DNA of 64,000 nucleotides from positions 157,680 to 221,679 of IMG/VR virus record IMGVR_UViG_3300017971_000190. The stretch is one strand, 5' to 3'. The position numbers and the translations under genes are program-made. How positions within the stretch are numbered: the first letter of the stretch is position 1; each line of letters starts with the position of its first letter. Of this stretch, positions 580 to 32,901 are shown in pieces. Below the pieces are notes generated by a model. The model was not told the DNA's origin and did not search any database. It saw only the letters and a program-made list of their open reading frames with translations.

Positions 580-1464
580 CTATTCTAAAAATCCAGCTCT
601 GCTCCACTGGTCAATCATTTTCTTCACAGCTTCAGTAGCACTATTTCCTTCTGTATAGTCAGCAACACCGTAGGCTCCATCGTAAGGTTTACCTTCCATT
701 TCACTCAGGTAGGCTTTGTATTCGAAAAAGTCGGGTAGTCCACCGCCTTCTTCACTTTCGGGATCGTCATAGAATCCTGTTTGGTAAATATCTATGGTAG
801 CTACTGGTGCATCTGCTCTACCAACATCGTGCCAACGTGGTTCTTGAGCAGAAACCTTTAATCTATTAGCTGGAACCGGTGTGTCAATTACTGCAATGTC
901 AGCGTACTCTAACTGTCTTAGAGCTTCTTGAAGAGGTTTTCCTTTTAGGAGCTGGGAAAGTGATTTAACTCCTTCTTCACCGAAACCAGCATGGTACTCT
1001 AAATCTGTACCCCAATCTTCTTGAACTACTTCTGCCAATTCATCCAGTACACGGTCTTTAGAATGATGTTCCAAAGGAGTAATATAAAGCTGAGTAGGTT
1101 CTTCTAAGTAGTTTACCCAAATATAAGCTACTTCATCTTCAGAAGTAATGGCTACTTTTTTACGTCGCCTTACACTAGCTGTGGCTTCTAATCCTACAAC
1201 ACCAGCCATGGTATCATTCAATTCTAAAAACGAATCTAGAATTTTGTCTTCAACAACTCCGTCTAGTTTATGGAGGATTTTGTTGCTCTGATCGAACTGC
1301 TTACCCATGGTTGCTTTGTAAGCATCTGTGAGCGTTTTAACGATTTTGCCGCTTGCAGTTTCAAACTGCTGTAGCAGCTGTTGCAGCTGGGCTTCTCGGC
1401 GTTGGCTTGCTAAGTGCCTGCGATTTTTCATTTTCCTGATTGTCCCTTCAATTGCGATAGCCAT
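580..1464 (-). CDS. modular acidic protein with Arg-run/Ala motifs (putative internal head protein)
   Basis: 294 aa; motifs KNRRHLA and SVRRRKKVA precede acidic domains. Confidence 0.6.
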   Translation of the reverse strand: MAIAIEGTIRKMKNRRHLASQRREAQLQQLLQQFETASGKIVKTLTDAYKATMGKQFDQSNKILHKLDGVVEDKILDSFLELNDTMAGVVGLEATASVRRRKKVAITSEDEVAYIWVNYLEEPTQLYITPLEHHSKDRVLDELAEVVQEDWGTDLEYHAGFGEEGVKSLSQLLKGKPLQEALRQLEYADIAVIDTPVPANRLKVSAQEPRWHDVGRADAPVATIDIYQTGFYDDPESEEGGGLPDFFEYKAYLSEMEGKPYDGAYGVADYTEGNSATEAVKKMIDQWSRAGFLE

Positions 1465-1465
1465 G

Positions 1466-1720
1466 TTAGTCTATCCAATGTCTAGTGTTTGTTACACGCC
1501 TTACTACCTCATCATAGAGATAATCGTCATCGTTTTTAGATAAATCATTTTCTGTAATACCAAACTTGGCTAGTAGTGCATAGTATTTATCTTGAGCGCT
1601 TGGAGTGTCCATTATTTGAGCCAGCAAAATAGATAGTCCTTGCCTGAATCCTAAATTGTTAAATAAGTTCTCTACAACGTCAGCTATATTTGGTCCTAGT
1701 GCTTGTCTTCGTTTTCTCAT
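1466..1720 (-). CDS. small protein with Arg leader (MRKRRQA)
   Basis: 84 aa; basic leader ends in Ala. Confidence 0.65.
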   Translation of the reverse strand: MRKRRQALGPNIADVVENLFNNLGFRQGLSILLAQIMDTPSAQDKYYALLAKFGITENDLSKNDDDYLYDEVVRRVTNTRHWID

Positions 1721-1725: not shown

Positions 1726-2181
1726 TTAGCCTTGTGAATTATTTGTTATTTCAATGTAGTAGGCTTCAGCTCCGCTACTTTTGTTACTGGACCTAAAACG
1801 TTGTAGAAAAGTCAAAACCTCGTGAATGGCCATTACTTTGTTAGCTCCAGAAGGGTAAGGTTGTGATCCGTCTCTAGACCAAAGCCAACCCAAACCCTCT
1901 TTTTTGCTTCCTATTTTAATGTACCACAGCTCTCCAGCTGCAGCAGCTTCCTCAGCCTTTACCAATTTTTCAGGGTCAATATCACCTTTTATTTCTTTGG
2001 GAATTTGTTTAATAGTTTTTGTAAATCCAGCTTCTCGGCCAGGAAGGTTTTCTCCTGTTTTGCTGCGGAGCAAAGCAAACACATGAAAAAGAATTCCGTC
2101 CCAACGGAAAAAACGATCATCGTAGACTACACTCTGGGCAGTCTTTTTAATGTAAGTTTTGCTACCTACTTTGATTTTCAT
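1726..2181 (-). CDS. hypothetical protein with KKTA leader motif
   Basis: 151 aa; N-terminus MKIKVGSKTYIKKTAQ. Confidence 0.65.
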   Translation of the reverse strand: MKIKVGSKTYIKKTAQSVVYDDRFFRWDGILFHVFALLRSKTGENLPGREAGFTKTIKQIPKEIKGDIDPEKLVKAEEAAAAGELWYIKIGSKKEGLGWLWSRDGSQPYPSGANKVMAIHEVLTFLQRFRSSNKSSGAEAYYIEITNNSQG

Positions 2182-2182: not shown

Positions 2183-3016
2183 TTATCCTCCCATGACGTC
2201 TAGTTCAACTTCAAAAATAACTGTTTCATCTGCTGCGTGTACTTCAGCACTGTAGGGATAGTCACTTTCTTCTGCCCACTCCATGTTTAGACGACGAGGT
2301 GGATCCATATCAAGGTCATAAACAAAATACTCATTCACAAATCGTTTGATTTTAGGTTTAAGTGTTTGCAGTAGTTCTCTACTGTTCACCACAGCAGAAA
2401 GTAATTGGTGTTTTGAAGCATTGCTTAGATAACGGAAAAGCACTCGTCTTTGTTTACCAGCTAAACTAGCCAAACTTTGTCCACTTACTGCGAATCTAAC
2501 AGTAACAAGAGATATGAAGTCATTGTCTTCTGGTTCTTGGCCACTTGCAAATTCTATACCTTTTAGCTCTACATCGGAAGGATTTAAAACAGCAAACCTA
2601 TGGCGTCTCCTTAGCATGCTTGCAGCCTTTGGCCTTTCTACCACTGTTTCTGTGGTATCCTTTTTCAATTTTGTTTCTTGCTCGCCCCACCACTGAACAG
2701 CCAATTGCCACACTTTTTGCTCTAACAGACTTTGAAGAATGCTAAAAAGGTCAAGATAGTTCAACTCCTTAATAGGAGCAGTACCTAGTTTTTCGTTGTA
2801 GAAAAGAAGTTCGATTAATTCATTACCTGTTAGGTCATCTAAAGATGGTTTTGTTTTGAAAGCTGTGTTGGCATCTTTACCACTATCAACTTCTTTTTGC
2901 ACCTTTTTAAGATAATCGTCTACCAGCTTTTTTAAATCCGGACTGGGAGAGAAGGTTTGCGTACCTATTTCTCCTGGTTTAACTACTCTTGTGTATGCTT
3001 TTCTTTTTGGTCTCAT
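2183..3016 (-). CDS. two-module protein with basic leaders (MRPKRKA; internal MLRRRHRFA)
   Basis: 277 aa; internal ATG at 2617 starts an ML-Arg-run leader. Confidence 0.65.
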   Translation of the reverse strand: MRPKRKAYTRVVKPGEIGTQTFSPSPDLKKLVDDYLKKVQKEVDSGKDANTAFKTKPSLDDLTGNELIELLFYNEKLGTAPIKELNYLDLFSILQSLLEQKVWQLAVQWWGEQETKLKKDTTETVVERPKAASMLRRRHRFAVLNPSDVELKGIEFASGQEPEDNDFISLVTVRFAVSGQSLASLAGKQRRVLFRYLSNASKHQLLSAVVNSRELLQTLKPKIKRFVNEYFVYDLDMDPPRRLNMEWAEESDYPYSAEVHAADETVIFEVELDVMGG

Positions 3017-3536: not shown

Positions 3537-4998
3537 GCATTTTTAAAACTTCTACAGCATCTTCTATTTTTTCGTCCGCTTCTCTAAACATGGTTAAAAG
3601 CTCCTCTAATTGAGGACCCTCAAATTTTTTACTATTGCCGTAGGCCATGCGCAAAAGTACAGGGAGTCTATCTAAAATAGGAGTAAGACCACCAACTATA
3701 CTACGAATGTCATCTTCGACATCTTCATACTCATATCGTACAGCAACTTTTCTTCTACGTCGTCTCAACATTGCTTTTCTCCTGTTCGCTACCAAAGGTT
3801 CGTACTTTTTGTTTTCTTCTACCGCTTGAGCAGCAGCTTCAAAAGCTGGCCCTAAAACTGCATTTTCAATATCTTTAAGATAGTTGTAAATATTTTCTTC
3901 GTTTTCAGATCCGGGCGTTAATTTAAAAAGTATACCAGAAATTTCTCTGGAATAGTCATAATAATCTAAAGAACTAACGTCTCCTGTTCCACTTGTTTCA
4001 GCCCATGTTACAACTTGAGCAATTTCGTAAATCCAATTTTCTACAAGTTGATCAAACTGACTCCAGAGATATTCTCCCGCTTCACTGTCAACAAACCAAT
4101 CTTCATACTGGTTTAATTTGTTTTCTATAAAGGGAGTAATGGCCTCAACTACGGCCTCCTCTACTTGAGGATCGTTGTCGTAAAACTCTGCTCTCCTCTT
4201 AACACTGGCTGCTTTCTGTTCTGCTTGCTCATCTTCTTCAGCACTGTACTGCAAAACTTGGGCGGCAAATTTTTCTAGCTCTTTAAGTACTTTGGAGGTT
4301 GTCTGCTTAGCAGCTGTACCTGCTGTTTTGAATAGCTCTGCTTTTAGTTTACTAGCTTCGTCTGTGGGATCTACTTTTTTAAGCTTCTTTTTACTTTTCT
4401 TGCTTAAACCATGTTCCCAAATAGATTTAGCCAGAGCACCAGTTACCTTACCCAATTTTCTTTCAACGGTAGTTTTCTGACTTCCCCACGTATCAGGATC
4501 TACACTTTCTAGCACACCTTTAAGAGCAGTAAAATAAGCAATACGGTCAATAATATCATAAGCGTGGGTTCTATCTAAAATCTCTTCTGTAGATTCTCCG
4601 GTAGTAACGCTTATCCATTTATCTACAACTTCAACAGCAGCATTGTAGACAAAATCAAAAGAGCCCATGAGGAGTTTGGATCCAGCTTTTACTGCTTGAT
4701 CTACATATTCTTTTTGAGCCCCAGCTTCCTGACCTTTCATGAAGCTTTTTAAAAGGTCTGTTACTGTTTCTCCAAATAGATTTTTCCCTTTGTGCTTTTT
4801 GAATTCTTCTATTTTAGAGGGGTTAATAGCTGCTTGAACAATAAAATAAGCAAGTCTTTTATTTACTAAAGCTTTAAAAGCAGGGGATAATTTTTTAGGA
4901 GAAGCAATTGCAGCTCGGCAAACTTTACCAAGCTCGAAAAAATGAGAGGGATTTTCTAAAAATGGTAAAAAATCCCGAACTGCTATATTGATAGACAT
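3523..4998 (-). CDS. modular putative internal head protein with an SD-equipped internal start at 3771
   Basis: 491 aa; motifs SVKRRA and MLRRRRRKVA; AGGAG lies 7 nt before the internal ATG. Confidence 0.65.
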   Translation of the reverse strand: MSINIAVRDFLPFLENPSHFFELGKVCRAAIASPKKLSPAFKALVNKRLAYFIVQAAINPSKIEEFKKHKGKNLFGETVTDLLKSFMKGQEAGAQKEYVDQAVKAGSKLLMGSFDFVYNAAVEVVDKWISVTTGESTEEILDRTHAYDIIDRIAYFTALKGVLESVDPDTWGSQKTTVERKLGKVTGALAKSIWEHGLSKKSKKKLKKVDPTDEASKLKAELFKTAGTAAKQTTSKVLKELEKFAAQVLQYSAEEDEQAEQKAASVKRRAEFYDNDPQVEEAVVEAITPFIENKLNQYEDWFVDSEAGEYLWSQFDQLVENWIYEIAQVVTWAETSGTGDVSSLDYYDYSREISGILFKLTPGSENEENIYNYLKDIENAVLGPAFEAAAQAVEENKKYEPLVANRRKAMLRRRRRKVAVRYEYEDVEDDIRSIVGGLTPILDRLPVLLRMAYGNSKKFEGPQLEELLTMFREADEKIEDAVEVLKMLATL

Positions 4999-5283: not shown

Positions 5284-7302
5284 CTATTTTCTGCGGTGTT
5301 TACGTGGTCTATGACGCCATTTTTTACCCTCTACACGATCTGCCAAACTAGCACAGAATGCCCCCGGATCTGTAATCTCTGGATCACCTTGTAGTTCTTC
5401 AACACAAGAACTAACGCTACCACCCATACTATTCCAGTAGCTCTCTAAACTATCTTTGTCCCACCCCTCAGGTAAACTTTCCCACTTTCTACCCGTTCTA
5501 TGAGGACGACCACGACCACAACAAGAAGTGCGATGACGATGATGGCTTTGGGAAAACGTAGCTGATACTAAATTCATGTTACTGCAATAAAAAGCTAAAC
5601 GGTTTGCTTCGGTGTCGTTTTTGGGGGCTAAATCATTAAATTCGTCACCGCTTTCATTTTCTGCGTGCCACCCTGAATTGTCTTTGTAAATTAAAACCCA
5701 CATATCTTCTTCAATATTAGACAGTCTACGATCATAAAAATCATAAAGACAAGACAATGGCACATCAAATTCTGAATAATCTGAAAATGAATCAGCTTTT
5801 CTGTGACGTTTTCTAGCAATACGCTTTGCGTAAGCTTCTCGTTCAGCATCATATTCGGAGACGTAGTCTTTGACTACACTCCAAATGGCGTCACTTTCTT
5901 TTTTATTGTAGTGAAGGGTGGTATCACCAAGGTGTTCTACTACTGCTTTGACAATAGTATCAACTTCATGCCCCAGCTCAGCTCCGCGTTCAATTATGCG
6001 AGCTACGTGAGGATCTCTTTTCCAATTAATCATTTGTGAAGCTGTAGATGCATATCTATAGTCAATTTCTTCAAGTGTGGCATCAATATCTTTGAAGTAA
6101 AGAGTAGGGTAATAATGATTCTCATTGGCCCATTCTTTTATGAACTCAATAGCTTCATCCTGGTTATTAAATACACCAATTAATTCGTCATCAATTTCAA
6201 GTTGCACTTCAGAACCAAATTCATCGGTGTAACGAAGAAAAGCATCACCTCTACCAGCAAGTCTACGTCGTCTTCGTCTAAAGTTACCCTTACGGTCTTT
6301 TTTCCTACTAATCATAATTTTGCCCTTTTCGCTTTTAGTTAAAGCAGTTGTTTCCTTTTTGTCGTATTCTTTTCGGTAAACCCTTTTACCGTAAACGTTA
6401 TCCACGTACCAATCTTTAACACCATACTGCTTAGCCCACTTCTTTAACTCAGAGACACTTATAAATTCCAACTCTTTTTTCTGTTTAGCTTTATCTTTTG
6501 GTACATCATCACCGTACTTATCTTTTTTAGCCAATCCACCAGCCACTTCAGCTTTGCTAGGATTACCAGGAACTAATAAGTATTGTTGGCGTCTACGGTG
6601 CCAGTACACTTTCCCGGTTTTAACCTCTTCTGGATCTCCCCACCGCTCCAACTCTTTAATAAGAGGTTTTTCTCCAGAGAACCAATGTATTCCTTTAATT
6701 TCAGTTGCTACTCTACGACGACCCATTGTATTAAAATTCCCTTTATGAGTTTTGAAATTACTACCGGAATTAAAAGGATCTATGCGGTCAATTTCCAAAT
6801 AAATTTCAAAAAGGTCGGGTTCAAGTACGTGACCAGCACTATTTACTAACCATATTTTAGACACTTCAGGATAGTCACCGTCTCTATTTAAAGCTGGTTT
6901 AGGTAAACCATCCCAGTAAACTGTTGCGCTCAATTCTTCTTCTGACAATTCAGTTAACAGGTCTTCAGCATTCCAATCTAAGCCTGTTTGGTCTTCAACT
7001 GTATAAGAAGGATCTATTACTTGTTCCAGCACTTCTCTTAGAGTTGTGGGGTTTGTTTGCGCTTGTTTTAAAATCATGTTTTCAGCTTTCCTGGCTAACT
7101 CTACACAGACACCGTCATTTACACCGTTTTGTTGTCGAATTAAACTGTGAAGCTTATCTAAATCTTCACGATAAGGGTAACGGTACATAAGCTGTTCAAT
7201 GTAAATTTCCGCACCTTGACAATCCACAACAGAATTAGAGTTAGGATACCAGGTTACCCGAGGAGTAAACGGATAAACAGGACCAGTGTAAGCTTTTTTC
7301 AT
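5284..7302 (-). CDS. multi-module putative head protein (at least 3 Arg-run/Ala junctions; C-terminal C..DPGAFC motif)
   Basis: 672 aa; MGRRRVA, FRRRRRRLA, RKRHRKA; the C-terminal SCVEEL..ITDPGAFCASL motif resembles ones I recall from phage head-associated proteins. Confidence 0.6.
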   Translation of the reverse strand: MKKAYTGPVYPFTPRVTWYPNSNSVVDCQGAEIYIEQLMYRYPYREDLDKLHSLIRQQNGVNDGVCVELARKAENMILKQAQTNPTTLREVLEQVIDPSYTVEDQTGLDWNAEDLLTELSEEELSATVYWDGLPKPALNRDGDYPEVSKIWLVNSAGHVLEPDLFEIYLEIDRIDPFNSGSNFKTHKGNFNTMGRRRVATEIKGIHWFSGEKPLIKELERWGDPEEVKTGKVYWHRRRQQYLLVPGNPSKAEVAGGLAKKDKYGDDVPKDKAKQKKELEFISVSELKKWAKQYGVKDWYVDNVYGKRVYRKEYDKKETTALTKSEKGKIMISRKKDRKGNFRRRRRRLAGRGDAFLRYTDEFGSEVQLEIDDELIGVFNNQDEAIEFIKEWANENHYYPTLYFKDIDATLEEIDYRYASTASQMINWKRDPHVARIIERGAELGHEVDTIVKAVVEHLGDTTLHYNKKESDAIWSVVKDYVSEYDAEREAYAKRIARKRHRKADSFSDYSEFDVPLSCLYDFYDRRLSNIEEDMWVLIYKDNSGWHAENESGDEFNDLAPKNDTEANRLAFYCSNMNLVSATFSQSHHRHRTSCCGRGRPHRTGRKWESLPEGWDKDSLESYWNSMGGSVSSCVEELQGDPEITDPGAFCASLADRVEGKKWRHRPRKHRRK

Positions 7303-8185: not shown

Positions 8186-8467
8186 TTACCTTCTAAAACG
8201 TCTGCGTCGTCTAACCGAACCACCCCGTTGTCTAAACCGTTGTTCGTTAATAGCAGTTTTTAATTTTGCAGCAGCATCTTCCAACCACTCTTCTAAGGTC
8301 TCGGCTTCATTATCTGTTAAAAGATCTGGTCTAAGTCGAGCCTGGTATACAAACTCTGCAATGTCTTTTGCGTCTCTTTCAATGAGTTTGGCAAGTTGTC
8401 TAATGTGACGAAAGGCGAATTCTCTATCACTGAGGGCTAAATGTCGTCTTCTGCTTCTTCTTAACAT
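8186..8467 (-). CDS. small protein with ML-Arg leader (MLRRSRRRHLA)
   Basis: Start moved to ATG 8467, which removes the overlap with 8502..10331 and matches the leader family. Confidence 0.65.
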   Translation of the reverse strand: MLRRSRRRHLALSDREFAFRHIRQLAKLIERDAKDIAEFVYQARLRPDLLTDNEAETLEEWLEDAAAKLKTAINEQRFRQRGGSVRRRRRFRR

Positions 8468-8501
8468 TTTTAAGTCTCTCTCTCTTAAAGAGGTTGTTTT
8501 C

Positions 8502-10331
8502 TTACAGTCCGCGTTTGTACACATCTACACTATTTACTAATTCCCAAATTTTATCTGTTAATTCAAAAATAAAATTGGGTCCGGGATTTTCAATGTCCCC
8601 AGAATTAACACCTTCTTTAACCAAGTTTTTCATAATGGTCATAATATGTAAACTAGCATCCTCTCTAGCATCTAGGTAGCTTCGTGAAGGTTTGTAAGTT
8701 AAATCAGATTTTCTACGTCGTTTACTACTACGAGCAATAGATGGTCTGTGAGGAAAGTAAGACCTTATGAAATCTTGAACATCACTTCCCCCGTATACTA
8801 CGTCGCCTTTTACATCGGTAATGGATTCATCTGATCCTAGTTCACCATACAACCAAGATTCTAATTCTTCATCCTGCATCATTGTAGCAACATCTTTTTC
8901 TATGTTACCTGTTAAATTAACACCGGGAAGGATGTAAAGCGTACCATATTCGTCTTCTGTTACTTCTATTTGTGAAGGGTCAAAAGCGGCTTTTCTACGT
9001 CGTCTTAAACTAGAAGTTCTAATTGTGTCTTTAACCACTGGGTAACCGTATGGTAACTCCTGGTAAAATCTTCTACGTGGGGTTATTTTTTTCAGATACC
9101 TAACTATGCTTTCTTCTCTACGACTACTATAACCGTCTATGGCATAAATATTGTCACCTTTTTTAACAGCAATTACTGTACCACCCAAACCCATACTTTC
9201 TAGTTTTTCGCCGTCTGTCCATAAGGTTCCGACTCTACCACCGTCGTTAGGAACACCTTCAACAAAATCGTTTACCACTCTTTTATCAGCTGGTTTAAGT
9301 GCTGCTGTTCTAACTTTACTTTCCCTGACAACATACTCACTACGACTACTACACATAGTATATAACTCTGCGGCTTCAAGGTCGTTTAGTCTTGGAATAG
9401 TTTTTTGAATATCTCCTGTTGGGTCGTTACCATAATCAGTATTGGCGATCCATTTACCAGCTACGTGGAGCATATCTATAGGAAAGTTTTTAGTTACCCC
9501 AAATTGAGTTGGTTCCATTCGCAGAAAATCAAAGAGGCAAACAGCGCCTACTTCAAATTCAAGAGGAGCTACTCTGTCTGCACGACGTTCCTTGTGTAAT
9601 TTACCAACTGTAGTTCTACGTTTGCGTCCCATGATTTTGTTTCCTTTTCGTTGACTGGTAACTGGCATTTTAGGTGGTCTACCAGTAATGAGTGCTCTGG
9701 TGATGTCTGTTACTCTGTTAGGTCTTCTTACCTTCATGGCTGCTAAAGCGCTTTCTTTAACTAGTTCTTCGTTGTCGTAGGGATCAGCTGGGAAAGGGTG
9801 AGGTACGTCACCCTCTAATTGTGCCACCCAACTGGAGGCTTCGTCATCCCAGTAAACGGAAATAACATCGTCGTCCATGGAAAAACCTTTTTTGTCTTGT
9901 GGTCCGTACCTCAGCATGACGGTAGGAATTAACTCGTCTAGAGGTAACTCTTCACTGATAAGGTAATAGTCTTCGTGAGGGTAGTCTTCTTTTAATTTCT
10001 TAGTTAGTTTATTTCTGGCTTCTTCAACGCAACTTACAAAAGCGCTACCAAAAACACCGCGTTCACCACCAGAAAGACGATTATACTGTTCATCTAACCA
10101 ACGGTCTGGAGCAGAGAGAAAATCAGGTTCTTCTCCACTAATTATAGAGCGTATGAGATGCATCCCGTTCGCCAGCCCATGCATGTAGGGGTTGACGTTC
10201 CAAGTACCGGGGCTACACTGAATGGCGAGTAAATCGTCAATGCTGTCTAACAAGGCTTTGGTTTCGTAGGTAGTAGGTGGTTCTACTTTAACATGTGGAC
10301 GAGAAATAAAGTTGAAATCACCCCACGGCAT
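8502..10331 (-). CDS. multi-module putative internal head protein
   Basis: 609 aa; junctions MGRKRR..ERRA, SKVRTAA, SLRRRRKAA, KRRRKS; N-terminal PGTWNVNPYMHGLANG domain. Confidence 0.6.
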   Translation of the reverse strand: MPWGDFNFISRPHVKVEPPTTYETKALLDSIDDLLAIQCSPGTWNVNPYMHGLANGMHLIRSIISGEEPDFLSAPDRWLDEQYNRLSGGERGVFGSAFVSCVEEARNKLTKKLKEDYPHEDYYLISEELPLDELIPTVMLRYGPQDKKGFSMDDDVISVYWDDEASSWVAQLEGDVPHPFPADPYDNEELVKESALAAMKVRRPNRVTDITRALITGRPPKMPVTSQRKGNKIMGRKRRTTVGKLHKERRADRVAPLEFEVGAVCLFDFLRMEPTQFGVTKNFPIDMLHVAGKWIANTDYGNDPTGDIQKTIPRLNDLEAAELYTMCSSRSEYVVRESKVRTAALKPADKRVVNDFVEGVPNDGGRVGTLWTDGEKLESMGLGGTVIAVKKGDNIYAIDGYSSRREESIVRYLKKITPRRRFYQELPYGYPVVKDTIRTSSLRRRRKAAFDPSQIEVTEDEYGTLYILPGVNLTGNIEKDVATMMQDEELESWLYGELGSDESITDVKGDVVYGGSDVQDFIRSYFPHRPSIARSSKRRRKSDLTYKPSRSYLDAREDASLHIMTIMKNLVKEGVNSGDIENPGPNFIFELTDKIWELVNSVDVYKRGL

Positions 10332-10333: not shown

Positions 10334-10603
10334 TTAGTCTCCGTAAACACCCACCAAACGATACTCGGTTATGGTTACTAAATTACCGTGATAAAGAAGA
10401 TCGTTTTTCCTACCTGTTGGTTCTGCCTCTAAGCCGTAGCCTTGATTTTCACCAAAATAATTTTCATCAAACCAGATCACACTTTGAAGCTCTCTTGCAA
10501 CACTGTAAGGGTCTTCCAATTCATCTTCTTTAACCCAAAAGGTTGTTCCTTCAGATAAACGAGCTTTTGTAGCTGCTACTCTACGGCGTCTTCGTTTTAG
10601 CAT
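10334..10603 (-). CDS. small acidic protein with leader MLKRRRRRVAA
   Basis: AGGAG SD; 89 aa. Confidence 0.75.
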   Translation of the reverse strand: MLKRRRRRVAATKARLSEGTTFWVKEDELEDPYSVARELQSVIWFDENYFGENQGYGLEAEPTGRKNDLLYHGNLVTITEYRLVGVYGD

Positions 10604-10630: not shown

Positions 10631-10984
10631 TTATGGCATATCTAAGTACGCCCAACCTTTACTATCAAGTTCGTCTTCTATTTCTTTTTGTGAAAGGATT
10701 AACCCTTCTCTGCTTCCAACATCACGTAGTAGTTGTTTTAAATCCGTTATTGGTTGTTCTCCAGACCACTTAACCTTAAAGTTTTCTTCATCGCCTAAAT
10801 CTGTATGACTAAAAATTGCCGCTATGCCAATAGCATCGTCAATTGCTTCTTGTAGTTGTCTTGAGTTTATCGCTACTATTTCAAATACGTAAGGTTTAGA
10901 TTTATCTTTCGAGGTAAATACTTCTAAATAAGTGTAAACATATGTATATTCAGCAGCCATTCTGCGTCGTCTTCGTCTTAACAT
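10631..10984 (-). CDS. small acidic protein with leader MLRRRRRRMAA
   Basis: AAGGAG SD; 117 aa. Confidence 0.75.
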   Translation of the reverse strand: MLRRRRRRMAAEYTYVYTYLEVFTSKDKSKPYVFEIVAINSRQLQEAIDDAIGIAAIFSHTDLGDEENFKVKWSGEQPITDLKQLLRDVGSREGLILSQKEIEDELDSKGWAYLDMP

Positions 10985-11000: not shown

Positions 11001-11324
11001 TTATTTGTAATAACGATTCCAATAGGTTGTATTATATAGATTAGTGGTAAGCATTGAAACTAAAATATTGCGTAGAGGAGATTTGGCAGACCGTTTTTCT
11101 GGCCAAATGACAGGAATACCAGAAAGAGTCAGTTCTTCTACAATTTGAAACAATTCTTCCATATCAAGTCTGTAAAAAAAATCATCTAGTTGGGTATGAC
11201 TAAGATCCACATGATGATCTGTAAATTCAGTGAACACTTCTAAAAGAGTAGGAGAAGCTTTCAAAATAACATCCGATGCTGCTCCTCTAAAACAGGTATT
11301 TTTGTGTAATCTTCGCCTTAACAT
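11001..11324 (-). CDS. small protein with leader MLRRRLHK..RGAA
   Basis: Start moved to ATG 11324 (AAGGAGG SD). Confidence 0.7.
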   Translation of the reverse strand: MLRRRLHKNTCFRGAASDVILKASPTLLEVFTEFTDHHVDLSHTQLDDFFYRLDMEELFQIVEELTLSGIPVIWPEKRSAKSPLRNILVSMLTTNLYNTTYWNRYYK

Positions 11325-11338
11325 GATTTTACCTCCTT

Positions 11339-11557
11339 TTATCCCTGAGAACACCAAACAGAACCGTTACCGTCTTCATCAGCGTCCATCCAAACCTCAC
11401 CAAAGGCTTCACTGGCTTCAGTTAGCTGTGTGGCTTGAGGTTCAGACCAGTCACCAGCTTCATCTAAAAATTCATCAAACAGGTAACGAAGTTGTGCACT
11501 AGCTTCAAAGGGAGAAACAGCAGCTAATCGTCTTCTACGTCTATGTCGTCTTAGCAT
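11339..11557 (-). CDS. small acidic protein with leader MLRRHRRRRRLAA
   Basis: Start moved to ATG 11557 (AAGGA SD). Confidence 0.7.
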   Translation of the reverse strand: MLRRHRRRRRLAAVSPFEASAQLRYLFDEFLDEAGDWSEPQATQLTEASEAFGEVWMDADEDGNGSVWCSQG

Positions 11558-19370: not shown

Positions 19371-19452
19371 AGATTTGTCTTCTCCTAATGTTGTGAACAA
19401 CTTTCAGGTCGGCATGTTGGTTGGTAATTAGTGGGCCTTCCTGAAACTACTG

Positions 19453-20218: not shown

Positions 20219-20599
20219 CTAGTCAAAAGAAAGAGTAATTGGTTCTACAAGCTCTCCATCAGCTATATAAGCTCTAAATACAATAGGAGCTTCACCGAAT
20301 TCGTCTAAAATAGAAAGTGGCCTACCTTCAGGAAACTTCAAAAAACCTTTAATGTTGAAACCAGATTCAGGTCCCCCATAGTCACTTTCCAATTCGGTCC
20401 CTATGAGAGTAACAGGAGTACCGTATTGAGTTTGCAGCACTCTAATAATAAGCTGTTCAAATTCTTTCCAGTTGGCTTGAGGACTGTCTTCAAACTTGTC
20501 CACTAATTCTTCTTCAGTGGGGCCTTCTTCTGGAGGATCTTGTGCTATTTTAATTCTCTTGTAACGTAGAGAACCGATAGCTATATTTTCTTTTGACAT
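20219..20599 (-). CDS. hypothetical head-module protein
   Basis: 126 aa directly downstream of the portal; RYKRIKIA motif. Confidence 0.65.
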   Translation of the reverse strand: MSKENIAIGSLRYKRIKIAQDPPEEGPTEEELVDKFEDSPQANWKEFEQLIIRVLQTQYGTPVTLIGTELESDYGGPESGFNIKGFLKFPEGRPLSILDEFGEAPIVFRAYIADGELVEPITLSFD

Positions 20600-23453: not shown

Positions 23454-25784
23454 TTAAAACCTTCCTCTGTTACCACCATTGTGGGATTGTCTTCTGGTTT
23501 GTTGTCGTCCTTGAGGGGAACGTCCTCTGCCTGATCGTCTAGCTCTACCACCACCGTAAATATATTTAGGAATATTAAACATTCCTGCAATTGGTTTATT
23601 GGCTCTTTTAAACCCCATTGCTTCCATACCAGCTCTACGGTATTTGAAACGGCTTTTCTTTTCAAATTCCTTTTTGTAAGATTTTATAAATCTGTGGGCT
23701 AGAACTGTAGTTCTAAAAAGGTCATCATTGCCAATATCGGGTTTAAATAATTTACGATTAAAAACATTAACAGTAAGTATTTGAGCTAGACAGTGAGAAC
23801 GAGGGTACATAGATCTCATCGCCAAATCTCTAGTTTTTAAAATAGAATCAATGTCGCTATCTTGAGTATTAAATCGTATCTTATTTCCGCCTAGGTCATG
23901 ACGGAAATTTTTGAAATCGTTAAAAGTCAAGCTGTAACGTTCGCTAATTACGTTGTGTTTAGTTCTTAAATCATAAAAAGCATGAGCACTTTGCCAACGG
24001 TCATACGCTACATAGAGTACATTGAATGAGTTAACAATAGGAACAATTACATTATCGTATGCCCAAGCTAAATCTACACTCATACCGTTTCTAGGAGCTA
24101 CCTCCATTAACTCTTCAATGTACGCACCATCCAACTCGGGAAGGTAACGAGCAAAAGTAAGAGCAAATGAATTCTTCTTTTCTCCGTTGTCAACAGCTAA
24201 AGCATAAGCATAGAGGTTGTTCTTTTTAGGAATTTTTACTTCTGGTTGAAGTGTTTGTAATCCTAAGTCGCTTTCATTTTCTTTTATGACGTAAGTAAAA
24301 GCTGGCTCTGGTTCGGTCATCTCATAAACTAAATCTTCTAGTAGAGTTTGATCTTTAAAAAACGGGTTACTTGCCTTTGGAGGAATAGCATAGAAATCAC
24401 GGAGAATATCTTCTTCCGGTTCTCCTGCAAATTCGTCTCTGATTGCTTCTTCTGTTTGTTTAGGGTTAACTTCCCAGGTAGCAAAATGCGTATAGTAAAT
24501 TCGAGGATTTTTAGCAGCCACTTCAGCCCGTTGCATGATCGGGTCTCCGATAGAAGACGGGCTACTAATGTTTGCCATTATTGCGTCTATGGCATTATAA
24601 TCTCCATTTTTACGTCTAATATCTGCTGCTGCACGAAGTGTTCTTAAATTATTTGTAAGAGAACGGAAAATAGCCGAACCATCTCGTACTCTTCTTTTTC
24701 TACCTTGATCATCATAATTAAACCATCCAAGCTCATCTATGATATTTATGAGACCTGTTTTTCCGCGAAGATTGGAACTGTTAGCTGCTGCCATAGAAAG
24801 AGCAAGACGTTTGCTAGGAAAGGTAAGAAATGTTTGCCCACTTTGAAAAAGATCTAAACCTAAACGTCTACCCTCATCTTTAAGGTAAGAGGCCACACTT
24901 TTAAACCAAGGACTACTGCGCAAAGCATCGCAAAACGGTACCCAAGAAAATTCGCTGCTCTGTTTGAGTGTAGGTGATACAAATGTACCACTCACAATTT
25001 TATTAGCAGGCTCATCAAAATAAGCCATTGGATTTTCAAGGGCAAGATAACGATGAATATGGTATGTAGCTACAAATGTAGAAGCACTGTGACTTTTACC
25101 GCTCCGCTGTCCCCAAATAGAGCACAGTTCATTAGGAGGTACAGGTCTTAATCTGGAAAGTGCATAATCTCCGTAATCATTATATTTGTGGAATTTTGGA
25201 TCCACAATCCATTCCTGCAACATCTCTGTTCTGTTACGTTTGCAGACAGGACAAACACCATGTTCTAAAAGAACAAAACGCTCCATAAGCTCGCCATAAT
25301 TAGCATCTACTGGAACGTCAAAAATATAATCTAAATCTGAACAACTATAACAAGCATCTCTATTAAAATGAACAACTACTTGAAATTGTTTTGCATAAGG
25401 TTTAGTAGAACTGTTTAAAAAAGAGGGACTAATAATCCAATCTATAATGTTAGACGCTTCTGGGAATTTTTGGTCTGCAAAAACTCCCATATCAAAATTA
25501 GAGTCAATAGCTTTCTCAATTAAATCTTCCGGATTAGGTAATTTGTCAGGATCTGAAGGAAGGGAGTCAAAATTAACTACATCGTAAACAACATTGAAAA
25601 AGTCAATTTCTTCTATTGTAGGAGTAGGTAACTCGGTAGTAATTAATTCTGCGACTAATGGTGATTTCTTTTTCTTTTTACGACGTTTTTTCTTTTTTGT
25701 TTTAGTCTTGTCCTTTTTAGATGCACTTTTGGGCATCTCCTGAACAGCATTGATTTTAGGAGAAAGGAAATCTACTTTTTTCAT
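23454..25784 (-). CDS. terL: terminase large subunit
   Basis: Walker A GQRSGKS, Walker B IIDE, coupling motif ISSP, RNase H-like nuclease LAVD. Confidence 0.9.
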   Translation of the reverse strand: MKKVDFLSPKINAVQEMPKSASKKDKTKTKKKKRRKKKKKSPLVAELITTELPTPTIEEIDFFNVVYDVVNFDSLPSDPDKLPNPEDLIEKAIDSNFDMGVFADQKFPEASNIIDWIISPSFLNSSTKPYAKQFQVVVHFNRDACYSCSDLDYIFDVPVDANYGELMERFVLLEHGVCPVCKRNRTEMLQEWIVDPKFHKYNDYGDYALSRLRPVPPNELCSIWGQRSGKSHSASTFVATYHIHRYLALENPMAYFDEPANKIVSGTFVSPTLKQSSEFSWVPFCDALRSSPWFKSVASYLKDEGRRLGLDLFQSGQTFLTFPSKRLALSMAAANSSNLRGKTGLINIIDELGWFNYDDQGRKRRVRDGSAIFRSLTNNLRTLRAAADIRRKNGDYNAIDAIMANISSPSSIGDPIMQRAEVAAKNPRIYYTHFATWEVNPKQTEEAIRDEFAGEPEEDILRDFYAIPPKASNPFFKDQTLLEDLVYEMTEPEPAFTYVIKENESDLGLQTLQPEVKIPKKNNLYAYALAVDNGEKKNSFALTFARYLPELDGAYIEELMEVAPRNGMSVDLAWAYDNVIVPIVNSFNVLYVAYDRWQSAHAFYDLRTKHNVISERYSLTFNDFKNFRHDLGGNKIRFNTQDSDIDSILKTRDLAMRSMYPRSHCLAQILTVNVFNRKLFKPDIGNDDLFRTTVLAHRFIKSYKKEFEKKSRFKYRRAGMEAMGFKRANKPIAGMFNIPKYIYGGGRARRSGRGRSPQGRQQTRRQSHNGGNRGRF

Positions 25785-29126: not shown

Positions 29127-29498
29127 TTAGAACATGTGACTAGGCAGCTTCATACCAAGTGCGTGAGCTGCTTTGAAAATGTTGTTACGCATGAGGGAGA
29201 GACCCCACCGATCGCCATTTTCAATTACAGATCTCATGCGATTAAATGCTTCTAGTTCATTTCTGGTTAACTCGAATTTATTGTAGAAGTACTCATAAAC
29301 TTTATTTAACAATTCAACAGACTGTTCATCTTTATCTAAAACATCAACAGTATCCACATACGCAGTTACATCTACAAGGGCTTCGATAGCACTTTCAGCT
29401 CTTCGTTGCCTAGCAGCTAAACGTGAGCGACGAATACGTTTACGTCGCCTCCAGGAAGAATTATTTTTTGCCAATCTTGGTCGTCTGCGTTTTAACAT
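29127..29498 (-). CDS. small protein with leader MLKRRRPRLA
   Basis: Start moved to ATG 29498 (AAGGAG SD). Confidence 0.65.
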   Translation of the reverse strand: MLKRRRPRLAKNNSSWRRRKRIRRSRLAARQRRAESAIEALVDVTAYVDTVDVLDKDEQSVELLNKVYEYFYNKFELTRNELEAFNRMRSVIENGDRWGLSLMRNNIFKAAHALGMKLPSHMF

Positions 29499-29508
29499 GA
29501 GTATCTCC

Positions 29509-32500
29509 TTAAAGTTCTTCGCCTTCGTAACCATGAAGGTAATTTCTTAGTTCATACATATCTTCTTCATCTGCAAAGAAAACAAGAGCTAGCCTACCTG
29601 TGTCTTCATCCAAAGTAATTTCGTAACTTCCAGCTGGGAGTTCGCTGTAACCACTGTTCATAGGCATAACAATATAACGGGTAAGGGCACTTTGTAAATC
29701 TTCTTCACTGGCTTCAGAACCCAACTTTTTACGTAAATCGTAGTGTTTGACTACAGTCCAAAACTCTTCATCACTAGCGTTGGCAGGTAAAATTTCGTCT
29801 ACCTCAAATTCCATAGAGTCAGCTTCGCCTTCATAGGCGTCACTGTAATTGAGGTGGTTAAGTACGTGGCCATCGAAAACAGCTACGTCGTCTTGGAGAT
29901 CGTAACGAGCCATAATCTTCCTCCGTTTGAAAGAGGCTTCCATTTCCCACGGAATAGGTTTAACAGGCTTCTTTTTACGACGACGTTTTCTTTGTTTTAG
30001 AGCTTTATCTGTAACAGGCCACAACGTTTTCTTCTCTAAAGCCAACTCAAAAATATCAGCAATAATTTTGTCGTGAAGATACCATTTATCATTTTTATCA
30101 TAACCTTCTTCCAAACGCTCTTTAGCAAGTCTATTAGACGTATCCTTATTTCGTCTAAGGTCATTAAAATCTCTATGTGCTGCTAACCAAGCAGCTCTTT
30201 CATCTATTTGCTGTTCGGTTAAATCAACAGGCATAATATCGCCATGAGGCATATGAGGTTTATCGTACCAATCAACTGGTCTCTCATTGTCAATTATACG
30301 TGCTTTTTTTCGGAAAGTAGATCCTCTTCTTCCCTTACCAAAAGTATTTACCAAACCTTGACAATCTGCATCAGGAGGACAGTAAAATACCATGACTAGT
30401 CTATTAGCGTCGTCTACAGTAAACTGGTAACGACCACCAAACTCAGCTAGTTCACTGTTGCCTTGATTAAGGGGTGTAGCAATATTGTAGTTTAAGCTGT
30501 TCACGACGAACATGCGAAGTTCTTGAAGGTCTCCGCTACTTCTTAAACTATCGGGAAGTGAGAGTCCCTCTTTCTCGGCCATAATCTCCCACTCATCCCA
30601 AGGGGCATCCCAACTAATAAGCGTATCAAGTACGCAATCGAGATGATCAATAGTAGATTTCCTAGCTTGCTCTCTAAGACACTGTTTGACCATGTCATCA
30701 TAATGGTGAGGTCTAAGGGGCATTGCTTGTCTACGTCGTCCACTACGCCTAACTCTACCTTCTCTACTATGTTCTTTTCTAAACGCCTCAACAGCAAATT
30801 CTAAAGCCTGACCAGCAACCTTGTCACTAAGATCAAAAAGCTGTTCATGCAGTGTAAAGTCACTGGACATGAGAGCTAAAATTTCTTCTCCCTCAATGTC
30901 CATGGCACAAAGTTCATCCCAAGTACCTTCACATTCCCACGTACCAATACCACTACCAGCTTCTTCCCAAACAGCGTAGAGAATACCATCATCTTCATCC
31001 ATAAGGAGATCATAAGCTTCTTCTTTTTGGTCCGGTGTTAAACTGGTGTTGGAAGCCAGATATTTTTTAACAGCTGCTTTCCATTTCTGCACCCAAGCAT
31101 TTTTAAATTGTTCTGTTTCCGCCCAAAGTTCATCGTGTAAATACTCAAAAGCGTGATTTACATAATCACCCCAATCTTGATAAAAAGTGTCTAACATTAC
31201 TTCAAGTTGAGCATCACTTAAAGACTCAACTTGTTTGGGGTAAGTCTCTCTGGCAAATTTTACACCTTCACTGCCTTCCAGTTCTTGACCTTCACTTTCA
31301 ACAACAGTGCTTTCAATTTCTTGCATGAGCCCTTCCATAAGGGTTCTAGCATGATGATAGTAAAGAGCTATTTTACGACGCATTCTTGCTTTCCCTTCCA
31401 ACCTTAATTGTTGTTGACGAGGGTCAACACCTTCGGTGTATTCTTTAACTAGATGCCAAATTGGATGGGAAGGATCAAGGTAATCGTCACCCCAATTTTC
31501 CGCCATTTCCCGGACTATATCTTCGGTAGAGAGGTATTTATCTCTAGATAATTTTTGTATGTTTTTTCTAATATCTTCTTCAGTACCGTGAAAAATAGAA
31601 CCAAATTCTTCTTCAGCCTTTTCTTCTTCCATTTCTTTAATTTTATTTTGCACAGCGTGTTGCGCTAAACTACGTGATGCTTTCATATCTTCTTGAATGC
31701 TTTTCCATTCTTCTTCACCAGCACTAGCAGTCACGTTTTTAATTTCTGGCCAGAGTAAACTTTCTACTTCACCTTTTAACTGACTTTCGTTTACATCTTC
31801 ATGCCAGAGAGAATCTACAATGTCATTCTGATAAGTATCAAAATCACCCCACTCAGAAACTCCACCAATGGCGTCAAAGAAAGCTTGGTCAGCAGCATAA
31901 TCTCCCATATTTTCTATGGCTTGTCTAACTTTGCCTTCTGCTAAACTCCACGGATCTTCCTCATTTCCCACTTTAGAGATTAATTGTGCCAACGTATTTT
32001 CAATCCAATCTTCAACAGTACTTTTAACATCATCTAAGAAGTAGTCAGGACTAGGAGCGCTGTCATAAATGGCACTGCTGTAAACTTCTTTAAGAACGTC
32101 TAGCATGAGTTTAGGGTCATCACTAGCAGGAAGTTCTTCAAGTTCTACTAAACGTAGGAAGTCATCTTTATCTAGAACCTCCATCTCATCAGCATACAGC
32201 TGATGATAAATAGAATTCTGATAATCTTCACCCCAGTAACCCGCTGTTCTCTTAAAAGCAGCCACCAAGGATTTAGCAAAAGCTTGTTTCATTTGAAACA
32301 TTTCGGCACTGACTTTTTTACCTTCCAAATCCCAACTAGCAAGAGCTTTAGTTTCTGGACCACCGTGCTCAATACCTGCCTCAGTGATATAAGCTTTAGC
32401 TGGTACAGGAAGTTCAAACTCATCGAAGTCTTTGCTACTGGCTGGGCGCAAACCAAATTTAGCTAGTTCATCAGCAGTTACATGAGTTTTAGTCGGAATA

Positions 32501-32901
32501 GCATTTTCTGGTGTGAGCAATTCTACCTCAAAAATCTGTCTATCACTATCGTCTACATTGATACTTCTAACGTAGAGGAAGGGATAACGATCTTCAGCAG
32601 CATCAGCGTAGTACCACTTGTTCTTTTCTAAATTAAGTCTGCTAGCGTTTCGCTTTTTAGGTTTCTTAGAGCTGCTTTCTATTTCCTGAAGACAGCTGCA
32701 GCGAGCTACTTTTAAATCATACTTAGTAGCAAAAGCTTCTAATTTAGGCAAGTCTGCTACTTTAACATTATTTAAACCAATAGTAGCTTCGTTAGTAGAA
32801 AAAAGAGAAGCTCCTCTTTCCTGTAACAAAGGTTTGGCTTTTTCTACAGCCCCTGGAGCACCAGTTAAAGTGACAGCCCCATAAAATTGGACTTTACTCA
32901 T
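29509..32901 (-). CDS. very large multi-module acidic protein (putative internal head protein)
   Basis: About 1130 aa; junctions MRRKIA, GRRRQA, FRKKA, KRRKIMA; internal duplicated module; start moved to ATG 32901. Confidence 0.6.
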   Translation of the reverse strand: MSKVQFYGAVTLTGAPGAVEKAKPLLQERGASLFSTNEATIGLNNVKVADLPKLEAFATKYDLKVARCSCLQEIESSSKKPKKRNASRLNLEKNKWYYADAAEDRYPFLYVRSINVDDSDRQIFEVELLTPENAIPTKTHVTADELAKFGLRPASSKDFDEFELPVPAKAYITEAGIEHGGPETKALASWDLEGKKVSAEMFQMKQAFAKSLVAAFKRTAGYWGEDYQNSIYHQLYADEMEVLDKDDFLRLVELEELPASDDPKLMLDVLKEVYSSAIYDSAPSPDYFLDDVKSTVEDWIENTLAQLISKVGNEEDPWSLAEGKVRQAIENMGDYAADQAFFDAIGGVSEWGDFDTYQNDIVDSLWHEDVNESQLKGEVESLLWPEIKNVTASAGEEEWKSIQEDMKASRSLAQHAVQNKIKEMEEEKAEEEFGSIFHGTEEDIRKNIQKLSRDKYLSTEDIVREMAENWGDDYLDPSHPIWHLVKEYTEGVDPRQQQLRLEGKARMRRKIALYYHHARTLMEGLMQEIESTVVESEGQELEGSEGVKFARETYPKQVESLSDAQLEVMLDTFYQDWGDYVNHAFEYLHDELWAETEQFKNAWVQKWKAAVKKYLASNTSLTPDQKEEAYDLLMDEDDGILYAVWEEAGSGIGTWECEGTWDELCAMDIEGEEILALMSSDFTLHEQLFDLSDKVAGQALEFAVEAFRKEHSREGRVRRSGRRRQAMPLRPHHYDDMVKQCLREQARKSTIDHLDCVLDTLISWDAPWDEWEIMAEKEGLSLPDSLRSSGDLQELRMFVVNSLNYNIATPLNQGNSELAEFGGRYQFTVDDANRLVMVFYCPPDADCQGLVNTFGKGRRGSTFRKKARIIDNERPVDWYDKPHMPHGDIMPVDLTEQQIDERAAWLAAHRDFNDLRRNKDTSNRLAKERLEEGYDKNDKWYLHDKIIADIFELALEKKTLWPVTDKALKQRKRRRKKKPVKPIPWEMEASFKRRKIMARYDLQDDVAVFDGHVLNHLNYSDAYEGEADSMEFEVDEILPANASDEEFWTVVKHYDLRKKLGSEASEEDLQSALTRYIVMPMNSGYSELPAGSYEITLDEDTGRLALVFFADEEDMYELRNYLHGYEGEEL

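What the first reader, a model, noticed from the sequence alone, without database searches (positions are those of the whole stretch)
580..32901. Arg-run/x-Ala tag on about 17 head-module proteins: candidate capsid-targeting and maturation-cleavage code
Seen: a motif [RK]2-7-x-(A/S), followed by an acidic domain, starts many small genes (MLKRRRRRVAA, MLRRRRRRMAA, MLRRHRRRRRLAA, MLRRSRRRHLA, MRKRRQA). It also punctuates the large proteins (RRRRRKVA, RRRRRRLA, RRRRKAA, RKRKAA, RKRQA, RRRQA). It is concentrated around the protease/scaffold genes and is largely absent as a domain junction from the replication block. Known: T4 internal proteins carry an N-terminal capsid-targeting sequence removed by gp21, and phiKZ gp175 processes many head proteins at a short motif. 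Inference: here an Arg-rich tag addresses cargo to the prohead, perhaps by binding the Glu/Asp tracts of the scaffold, and protease 16570..17421 cleaves after [RK]-x-[AS] to release acidic cargo for ejection.
Basis: partly seen in the sequence, partly recalled or inferred. Interest (0 to 1): 0.85.

Follow-up and report, generated by a model that had tools for sequence, protein, structure and literature searches.

The report
Arginine-run leaders on phage head proteins
In an uncultured jumbo phage, about a third of the genes in the head module start with, or are divided by, a run of arginines ending in an alanine; this is probably a tag that sends proteins into the forming capsid and marks where the head protease cuts, but no experiment has tested that yet.

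Summary
The motif is real and not due to chance. In the window's head block, [RK]4+-x-Ala occurs 9 times against 0.4 expected; elsewhere it occurs once against 0.4 expected. By a fixed rule, 16 of 57 head-block genes carry an N-terminal basic leader ending in Ala (2.9 expected), against 2 of 47 other genes. The block runs about 20 kb past the window start, beyond the major capsid gene.

The tagged small proteins are unrelated to each other. Arg codon use is ordinary, so selection acts on the peptide.

Gene 16570-17421 is a T4 gp21-like prohead protease.

A sister phage (protease 88% identical) keeps 21 of 28 motif sites while run lengths change. Modules bounded by the motif appear as separate genes in one phage and fused in the other.

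More distant relatives (protease about 50% identical) lack Arg runs. They carry a different shared leader, roughly PxxIxYKGxxYxLA, on many head genes. At orthologous positions the two leader types end on the same invariant Ala.

The best reading is a swappable capsid-addressing leader plus a processing site, analogous to the T4 capsid targeting sequence.

Cleavage, the scissile bond and binding to the scaffold are untested. The claims of a following acidic domain and of A/S equivalence are not supported.

The parts
23454..25784 (-). large terminase; upstream limit of the core head module
   Evidence: phrog_17415, 2.8e-94
20606..22924 (-). portal protein. Its N-terminus is basic and ends in Ala (GRLRRGSSRRA at 22862-22894; RKKRLGA at 22820-22840).
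   Evidence: phrog_16240, 8e-73; a basic N-terminus is also present in relatives
20543..20569 (-). leader end LRYKRIKIA|QDPPEE of gene 20219-20599; intermediate between the YKG-type and Arg-type leaders
   Evidence: alignment A3; AF2 residues 1-23 have pLDDT<50 and the folded body starts at about residue 29
19618..19650 (-). leader MRVRRVKKVTA| of gene 19453-19650
   Evidence: Alignment A2: orthologues carry a YKG-type leader, and the Ala is one of only 3 invariant columns. Sister phage has MRIERVKKIRVA|.
17532..19400 (-). scaffold-like protein with a basic N-terminus (19308-19370), an Arg-run cluster (RKRRTRRSRLA 18981-19013, RRRRRA 18882-18899, RRRRRRFS 18831-18854, RRRKA 18786-18800), a Glu/Asp tract of about 95 aa, and a conserved C-terminal domain
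   Evidence: phrog_20988, the same family as the gene next to the protease in Dickeya phage JA29; sequence; orthologues; Arg sites kept in the sister phage
16570..17421 (-). prohead maturation protease, T4 gp21-like fold; His155 and Ser208 are invariant
   Evidence: phrog_18299, 2.3e-38; alignment A4; AF2 pLDDT 83.8; only PDB match is 5JBL, E=4e-4
13234..16326 (-). 1030-aa multi-module protein with a weak SprT-like N-terminus and internal motifs RKRQA (14830-14844), RKRTA (14401-14415) and RKRKAA (13609-13626). It is two genes in the sister phage, the second starting MKRRVA.
16277..16537 (-). free-standing 86-aa module (starts MPYF...). In the sister phage the same module is fused behind RRRIA|LPYM...
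13165..13203 (-). leader MARKTKTTLRKAA| of gene 11599-13203 (internal RKRKA at 12316-12330)
   Evidence: orthologue L004 starts MKHRNKLRRRLAA|; the conserved body starts just after
11519..11557 (-). leader MLRRHRRRRRLAA| (true start at Met17 of ORF 11339-11605)
   Evidence: sister phage has a longer Arg-rich leader ending RRRFA| before the same body
11277..11324 (-). weaker leader MLRRRLHKNTCFRGAA (true start at Met12 of ORF 11001-11357)
10952..10984 (-). leader MLRRRRRRMAA| of gene 10631-10984 (orphan protein)
   Evidence: no homologue in 5.8e9 proteins
10571..10603 (-). leader MLKRRRRRVAA| of gene 10334-10603
8985..9005 (-). internal junction RRRRKAA| in protein 8502-10331
   Evidence: sister phage has KRRKA at the aligned place
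8435..8467 (-). leader MLRRSRRRHLA| (true start at Met20 of ORF 8186-8524)
   Evidence: sister phage has MIKRRRRRVA| on a body 69% identical
5794..6720 (-). three internal junctions in protein 5284-7302: RRRVA (6706-6720), RRRRRRLA (6256-6279), RKRHRKA (5794-5814)
3742..3783 (-). internal RRKA-MLRRRRRKVA| in protein 3523-4998: a complete 'ML' leader with its own Shine-Dalgarno-like site, either a fossil or an alternative start for the last 72 aa
   Evidence: sister phage has KRRRRLA here
2996..3016 (-). leader MRPKRKA| of gene 2183-3016
   Evidence: sister phage has MRRKRRQA| before the identical YTRVVKPG
2137..2181 (-). leader MKIKVGSKTYIKKTA| of gene 1726-2181, a degenerate YKG-type leader kept in this phage
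   Evidence: orthologue L019 starts ...IQYKGCRYVLA
1700..1720 (-). leader MRKRRQA| of gene 1466-1720
1150..1437 (-). gene 580-1464: N-terminal RKMKNRRHLA| (1408-1437) and internal ASVRRRKKVA| (1150-1170) bracket a module of about 85 aa that is absent from the sister phage
29415..29498 (-). leader MLKRRRPRLA| plus RRRKRIRRSRLA| (true start at Met13 of ORF 29127-29534)
29908..31380 (-). internal sites RRKIA, RRRQA and KRRKIMA in the 1140-aa protein 29509-32931
   Evidence: no orthologue available to test them

Best explanation
The Arg-run/x-Ala peptide is a selected signal of the head module of one jumbo-phage lineage. It comes in two forms. As an N-terminal leader of about 7-25 residues (typically M-L-[RK]-R4-6-x-A-A) it tags otherwise unrelated small and large proteins. 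As an internal linker it separates modules of large multi-module proteins.

Most likely mechanism:
- The polycationic part holds the protein in the assembling prohead core, probably on the long Glu/Asp tracts of the scaffold-like proteins.
- The invariant Ala belongs to the site where the gp21-like prohead protease (16570-17421) removes the leader and separates fused modules.
- The result is mature internal head proteins plus small polycationic peptides.

Shown: the signal is non-random, acts at the peptide level, is confined to the head block, is conserved in position, is interchangeable with another leader class, and coincides with gene and module boundaries. Also shown: the protease is gp21-like.

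Inferred: proteolysis at the Ala, electrostatic docking, and the fate of the products.
For: Enrichment and confinement to the head block. The tags stop where non-structural genes begin.

Codon use in the runs equals genome-wide use, so selection is on the peptide.

The bodies of tagged proteins are not paralogous.

The protease is gp21-like.

Sister phage (ENA scaffold_85; protease 88% and capsid protein 94% identical):
- 16 of 47 head-block genes are tagged and 0 of 10 downstream genes.
- 21 of 28 alignable sites keep a basic run plus Ala while run length and residues change, even where the body is only 39-46% identical.

Module logic:
- The window's free-standing 86-aa gene (MPYF...) is fused in the sister phage directly after RRRIA|LPYM.
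- The sister's 684-aa gene starting MKRRVA is fused in the window.
- An 85-aa module in gene 580-1464 and a 110-aa module in P0003 are insertions bracketed by motifs.
- 6 of 29 internal motifs have a Met within the 3 residues upstream (P=0.0045).

Leader swapping:
- Relatives with about 50% identical proteases carry a PxxIxYKGxxYxLA leader on 35 of 270 genes. It occurs on 0 of 1193 genes in distant loci, and 0.1 is expected from shuffles.
- In orthologue alignments the Arg leader and the YKG leader end on the same invariant Ala.

Other points:
- The leader of 20219-20599 is modelled as disordered ahead of a folded body.
- The window protease is the most acidic in its clade, net -8 against -4 to +6.
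- Precedents: the T4 capsid targeting sequence and the SPN3US propeptides (PMC10052503), and engineered deca-arginine tags that load cargo into negatively charged cages (PMC9051456).
Against: - There are no proteomic or biochemical data, and the phage is uncultured.
- The only structurally matched protease (T4 gp21) and the phiKZ/SPN3US type cut after Glu, not Ala. Glu follows the Ala at no fixed distance, so the scissile bond is unknown.
- The major capsid protein (L085:11709-12848) has no clear motif.
- Terminase N-termini in the clade are also basic and end in Ala, yet terminase is not a head-internal protein.
- The acidic scaffold tract is shared by relatives that lack Arg runs, so it gives no specific support for electrostatic docking.
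- The residues after the motif are not specially acidic.
- Some regex hits lie in conserved folded regions (portal).
Confidence: 0.5

Rival explanations
1. The Arg runs are kept in the mature proteins as polycationic segments. They bind packaged DNA or the acidic scaffold, neutralising charge in the way protamine or adenovirus core proteins do. There is no proteolysis at the motif, and the Ala is only a helix or linker preference.
For: Basic internal proteins are common in phage heads. The runs cluster in head-module proteins. No cleavage has been shown. gp21-type enzymes are known to cut after Glu (PMC10052503).
Against: - It does not explain the invariant Ala shared with a YKG-type leader that has no Arg run, at orthologous positions.
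- It does not explain the equivalence of fused and free-standing modules exactly at the motif.
- It does not explain the excess of Met just before internal motifs.
Confidence: 0.2
2. The motif is only a protease site, a linker that is cut. It has no addressing role, and incorporation into the prohead depends on the protein bodies or other regions.
For: Internal motifs at module junctions. The acidic tract is not specific to Arg-run phages.
Against: - Five to seven arginines are far more than a cleavage site needs.
- Unrelated orphan proteins share only the leader.
- Relatives use a 15-residue structured-looking leader, sometimes in tandem, which suggests a binding function.
Confidence: 0.15
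3. The basic leaders serve something outside the head: RNA binding like lambda N-type arginine-rich motifs, localisation to a replication compartment, or control of translation.
For: Arg-rich N-termini bind RNA in other phage proteins (own knowledge). Terminase N-termini are also basic.
Against: - The leaders are confined to the block from portal to capsid gene and absent from replication, tail and downstream genes.
- Codon use is ordinary.
- Many internal copies lie at module junctions.
Confidence: 0.05
4. The pattern is a compositional accident of Arg- and Ala-rich proteins.
For: The head-block proteins are somewhat richer in Arg (6.8% vs 4.9%).
Against: Composition-preserving shuffles never reach the observed counts. 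Positions are conserved in the sister phage.
Confidence: 0.01

Closest known systems
T4 capsid targeting sequence on internal proteins (IPI-III, Alt), removed by gp21 (Mullaney & Black 1996, cited in PMC10052503)
   Same: A short N-terminal leader is shared by otherwise unrelated proteins encoded near the head genes. A gp21-fold protease and a scaffold sit next to them. The set of tagged accessory genes turns over quickly.
   Different: The T4 leader is not polybasic and ends in [LI]-x-Glu with the cut after Glu. Here the leader is an Arg run ending in Ala. Here the same signal is also used many times inside large proteins. Nothing here has been shown by experiment.
phiKZ gp175 / SPN3US gp245 processing of head and ejection proteins at A-x-E (PMC10052503, PMC5694885)
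   Same: A jumbo phage with many head proteins carrying N-terminal propeptides, multiple cuts per propeptide, and a protease of the gp21 lineage.
   Different: That motif is small-x-Glu, and most of those propeptides are 111-254 residues long with no shared leader. Glu at +2 from the Ala is seen in only about 5 of 16 leaders here. No phiKZ-type genes were identified.
Herpesvirus assemblin maturation and release sites ([VLI]-x-Ala|Ser; own knowledge)
   Same: The protease fold family is related to phage prohead proteases. The site has Ala at P1 with an aliphatic residue two or three positions before it, resembling V-A, L-A, M-A and x-L-A here.
   Different: No Arg run, no leader function, and Ser at P1' is not seen here. 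This is a resemblance only.
Engineered deca-arginine tags that load cargo into negatively charged lumazine synthase cages (PMC9051456)
   Same: A polyarginine tag and an acidic interior partner give electrostatic encapsulation. This is the mechanism proposed here.
   Different: It is man-made, not a virus, and involves no proteolytic removal.
Encapsulin cargo-loading peptides (own knowledge)
   Same: A short transferable peptide addresses diverse cargo to the inside of an HK97-fold shell.
   Different: Those peptides are C-terminal, bind the shell protein itself, are not polybasic and are not cleaved.
YKG-type leader of the sister clade
   Same: It is N-terminal, sits on many unrelated head-module genes, ends in [LRV]-Ala, and occupies orthologous positions.
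   Different: It is a sequence-specific motif of about 15 residues (P-x-x-[ILV]-x-Y-[KR]-G-x-x-Y-x-[LR]-A) rather than a charge run.

Membership tests
T4-type capsid targeting sequence system | Short N-terminal leader shared by otherwise unrelated proteins | tested here: met
   Leaders are shared but the bodies give no BLAST similarity. 16 of 57 head-block genes are tagged vs 2.9 expected.
T4-type capsid targeting sequence system | Phage encodes a gp21-fold prohead protease and a scaffold core | tested here: met
   PHROG 2e-38; AF2 model matches only 5JBL; scaffold-like gene is adjacent.
T4-type capsid targeting sequence system | Leader ends in the protease's consensus site ([LI]-x-Glu) and is removed in the prohead | tested here: not met
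   Leaders end in x-Ala. Glu follows at variable distance. Removal itself is not testable with these tools.
T4-type capsid targeting sequence system | Leader is sufficient to package a foreign protein | not testable with these tools
   Needs a leader-GFP packaging assay.
phiKZ/SPN3US gp175/gp245 processing | Cleavage C-terminal to [SAG]-x-Glu in many head proteins | tested here: inconclusive
   A-x-E or x-A-E follows some runs (e.g. MAAE, KAAE, IAQE) but only about 5 of 16 N-terminal leaders. There are no proteomic data.
phiKZ/SPN3US gp175/gp245 processing | Membership of the phiKZ-like phage group (shared core genes) | not tested
   The closest cultured protease hits are Dickeya/Erwinia jumbo phages at about 37% identity. 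Dickeya phage JA29 has no motif.
Sec/Tat signal peptide | Basic n-region followed by a hydrophobic h-region and an A-x-A site | tested here: not met
   No hydrophobic stretch follows the Arg run in any leader.
Selected peptide signal (as opposed to a DNA or RNA element) | Synonymous codons vary and no nucleotide repeat is shared | tested here: met
   Mixed AGA/CGT/CGA/CGC codons, as genome-wide. Upstream DNA is unrelated apart from the Shine-Dalgarno site.

The most novel reading that the evidence does not exclude
A natural polyarginine address code. One jumbo-phage lineage replaced an ancestral sequence-specific leader (PxxIxYKGxxYxLA) by a plain charge run while keeping the same Ala processing point. 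It now uses that one signal both to load dozens of fast-evolving cargo proteins into the prohead by electrostatics and to punctuate polyproteins. As a result, genes can fuse and split freely without changing the mature products.
Probability: 0.35. Interest if true: 0.8.

Novelty: new variant of a known kind. Interest (0 to 1): 0.62.

Why it matters
If confirmed, it would matter in four ways.
- It would be the first polybasic capsid-addressing leader described in a phage.
- It would be a natural counterpart of the engineered deca-arginine encapsulation tag.
- It would show that leader classes can be swapped on a fixed processing site.
- It would explain how a head module can grow from about 5 kb to about 27 kb between protease and capsid gene by adding tagged cargo genes.

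It would also give a very simple, portable tag for loading proteins into large phage heads. In addition, it offers a sequence rule (leader present or absent) for predicting virion-internal proteins in uncultured jumbo phages.

Tried and rejected
- Megablast of 24 kb against GenBank phages found no match.
- Pfam and PDB sequence searches of the protease and the large proteins found nothing useful.
- Dickeya phage JA29, the closest cultured protease relative, has no Arg-run motif. The motif is therefore not a property of the protease family at large.
- A strict DNA pattern for ML-R6-x-A-A across IMG/VR returned only this contig plus 5 chance hits in non-coding frames of high-GC contigs.
- A metagenome scan with the protease found no intermediate relatives. 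The sister phage was found later, through a protein search with a tagged protein.
- Gene 10631-10984 has no homologue at all.
- The idea that an acidic stretch follows the motif is not significant.
- The idea that the scaffold's acidic tract co-evolved with Arg tags is rejected, because the tract is present in all relatives.
- Reading the site as A-x-Glu with a gp21-like cut after Glu is not supported, because the spacing to Glu is inconsistent.
- The candidate capsid gene L008:11133-12281 is rejected. The real one is L085:11709-12848.

Full report
**Context.** The window is the last 64 kb of a 221,679-bp IMG/VR contig (window x = contig x + 157,679). The contig is an uncultured jumbo phage with no close GenBank relative. 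Nearly all genes are on the minus strand. PHROG profiles identify:
- the large terminase (23454-25784);
- the portal (20606-22924);
- a scaffold-like protein (17532-19400);
- a head maturation protease (16570-17421, E=2e-38).

An AlphaFold model of the protease, built on 37 homologues (pLDDT 83.8), matches only T4 gp21 (5JBL) in the PDB. His155 and Ser208 are invariant. The major capsid gene lies outside the window, about 27 kb downstream of the protease (L085:11709-12848, phrog_2522 5e-47). In relatives and in Dickeya phage JA29 that distance is about 5 kb.

**Observation.**
- Every quoted string is present.
- Four 'ML' leaders lie inside longer ORFs, but each has a Shine-Dalgarno-like site at the right distance.
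- Against composition-preserving shuffles, [RK]4+-x-Ala is 9 vs 0.38 in the head block and 1 vs 0.39 elsewhere.
- Ala follows basic runs at +1/+2 in 14 of 27 cases in the head block and almost never elsewhere.
- By a fixed rule, 16 of 57 head-block genes carry an N-terminal basic leader ending in Ala (2.9 expected), against 2 of 47 other genes.
- The tagged block continues about 20 kb past the window start and ends where HU-like, helicase and exonuclease genes begin.
- Arg codons in the runs follow genome usage and upstream DNA is unrelated, so the signal is a peptide.
The residues after the motif are not specially acidic, and Ser is not an enriched alternative to Ala.

**What it is.** The tagged small proteins share nothing but the leader, and one has no homologue in 5.8 billion proteins. 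That is the pattern of a transferable tag.

Three comparative results bear on its function.

(i) *Sister phage.* An ENA scaffold of 87.7 kb has a protease 88% identical and a capsid protein 94% identical.
- It uses the same code: 16 of 47 head-block genes are tagged and 0 of 10 downstream genes.
- Of 28 alignable motif sites, 21 keep a basic run plus Ala while run length and residues change. For example, RRRRRKVA becomes KRRRRLA in a protein only 46% identical, and MRRRRRFA becomes MMRRRRTA in one only 39% identical.
- Several tagged small genes are simply absent from the sister phage, so the cargo-like set turns over quickly.

(ii) *The motif marks module boundaries.*
- The window's free-standing 86-aa gene 16277-16537 (MPYF...) is fused in the sister phage directly behind RRRIA|LPYM.
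- The sister's 684-aa gene starting MKRRVA is fused in the window's 1030-aa protein.
- An 85-aa module in gene 580-1464 and a 110-aa module in the sister's P0003 are insertions bracketed by motifs.
- Six of 29 internal motifs have a Met within the three residues upstream (P=0.0045). One, in 3523-4998, is a complete ML-R5-K-V-A leader with its own ribosome-binding site.

(iii) *A second leader class.*
- Relatives whose proteases are 38-52% identical lack Arg runs.
- They carry a different leader, P-x-x-[ILV]-x-Y-[KR]-G-x-x-Y-x-[LR]-A, on 35 of 270 genes. It occurs on 0 of 1193 genes in more distant loci, and shuffles give 0.1.
- No Pfam family covers it.
- In two orthologue groups the Arg leader of the window and the YKG-type leader of relatives end on the same Ala.
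- In alignment A2 that Ala is one of only three invariant columns: MRVRRVKKVTA|KTTED in the window against ...VYKGRTYVLA|KTRED in a relative.
- The window keeps degenerate YKG-type leaders on genes 1726-2181 and 20219-20599.
- The leader of 20219-20599 is modelled as disordered ahead of a folded body.

**Mechanism.** The best reading is a swappable addressing leader joined to a fixed processing point.
- The polycation would hold the protein in the prohead core. The scaffold-like proteins offer Glu/Asp tracts of 60-95 residues.
- The gp21-like protease would cut at or next to the Ala. That would release mature modules and small polycationic peptides, and would make fused and split gene arrangements equivalent.
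- Weak supporting detail: the window protease is the most acidic of its clade.
- Caveats:
  - The acidic tracts also exist in relatives without Arg runs.
  - Characterised gp21/gp175-type enzymes cut after Glu (PMC10052503), and no fixed Ala-Glu spacing is seen.
  - The capsid protein shows no clear site.
  - Terminase N-termini are also basic.
  - Nothing has been tested at the bench.

**Comparison and novelty.**
- It works like the T4 capsid targeting sequence, and partly like phiKZ/SPN3US propeptide processing. It fails the sequence-defined features of both.
- The aliphatic-x-Ala ending resembles herpesvirus assemblin sites.
- The charge principle mirrors the engineered deca-arginine encapsulation tag (PMC9051456).
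- Literature searches found no description of an Arg-run leader or of the YKG-type leader.
- I rate it a new variant of a known kind. The statistics and comparative evidence show a selected signal. The cleavage and targeting steps remain inferences.

Noticed in passing
L010-L021, L027, L002-L004 (e.g. L027:5292-12333; L019:7195-19236): A second, previously undescribed N-terminal leader, P-x-x-[ILV]-x-Y-[KR]-G-x-x-Y-x-[LR]-A. It sits on 35 of 270 genes around the protease in the sister clade and is sometimes in tandem. It also sits on an AAA_33 kinase-like enzyme (L021:18297-19109). No Pfam or PHROG family covers it.
   Followed up: partly
window 13234-16537 vs L103:10001-13074: Genes are split and fused differently between the two sister phages: SprT-like domain + 86-aa module + 684-aa body. 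The break points lie at Arg-run/x-Ala motifs. The window junction reads MKIRKS, which looks like a decayed leader.
   Followed up: yes
window 1150-1170, 4189-4200, 13609-13626: Three internal motifs are preceded by the same tripeptide (A-S-V before the basic run), and the sister phage has ASVKRHRRGG. This may be a second conserved flank of the junction.
   Followed up: no
window 48392-48964: A protein with four nearly exact 17-residue repeats of AT-hook type (KKRRGRPPKKKAADDAP), encoded by a 51-bp tandem repeat that is 99% identical. Gene 60967-61296 also has an RGRP motif.
   Followed up: no
window 63807-64000 (contig end): A 12-bp tandem repeat of 16 copies runs into the end of the contig and gives an odd Met/Thr-only reading frame (ORF 63568-63993). 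It may be a repeat that stopped the assembly. A 298-kb assembly of the same phage exists.
   Followed up: no
window 50623-51726: A 367-aa protein with about 30% Asp/Glu and long acidic repeats, lying outside the head block next to Lys-rich proteins.
   Followed up: no
window 19657-20085 and 7620-8180: Two small genes are conserved across the whole clade. One is a Cys-rich protein between portal and scaffold. The other is a protein ending in a CxxC...CxxC zinc-ribbon-like motif.
   Followed up: no
L012:2709-6533 and L015:62-3775: The portal in L012 (1274 aa vs about 800) and the terminase in L015 (1237 aa vs about 780) carry large insertions in otherwise collinear proteins, which look like inteins.
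   Followed up: no
window 34645-35568: The N-terminus reads like a patatin-type lipase (a GGGxxG stretch and then GxSxG), lying between the head block and the tail-fibre genes. This was judged by eye only.
   Followed up: no
window 16570-17421: The protease N-terminus (VVRGDAYVA|ERYD; relatives have HVGDYMLA|Q) resembles the YKG-type leader. It could be the enzyme's own docking or self-cleavage site.
   Followed up: no
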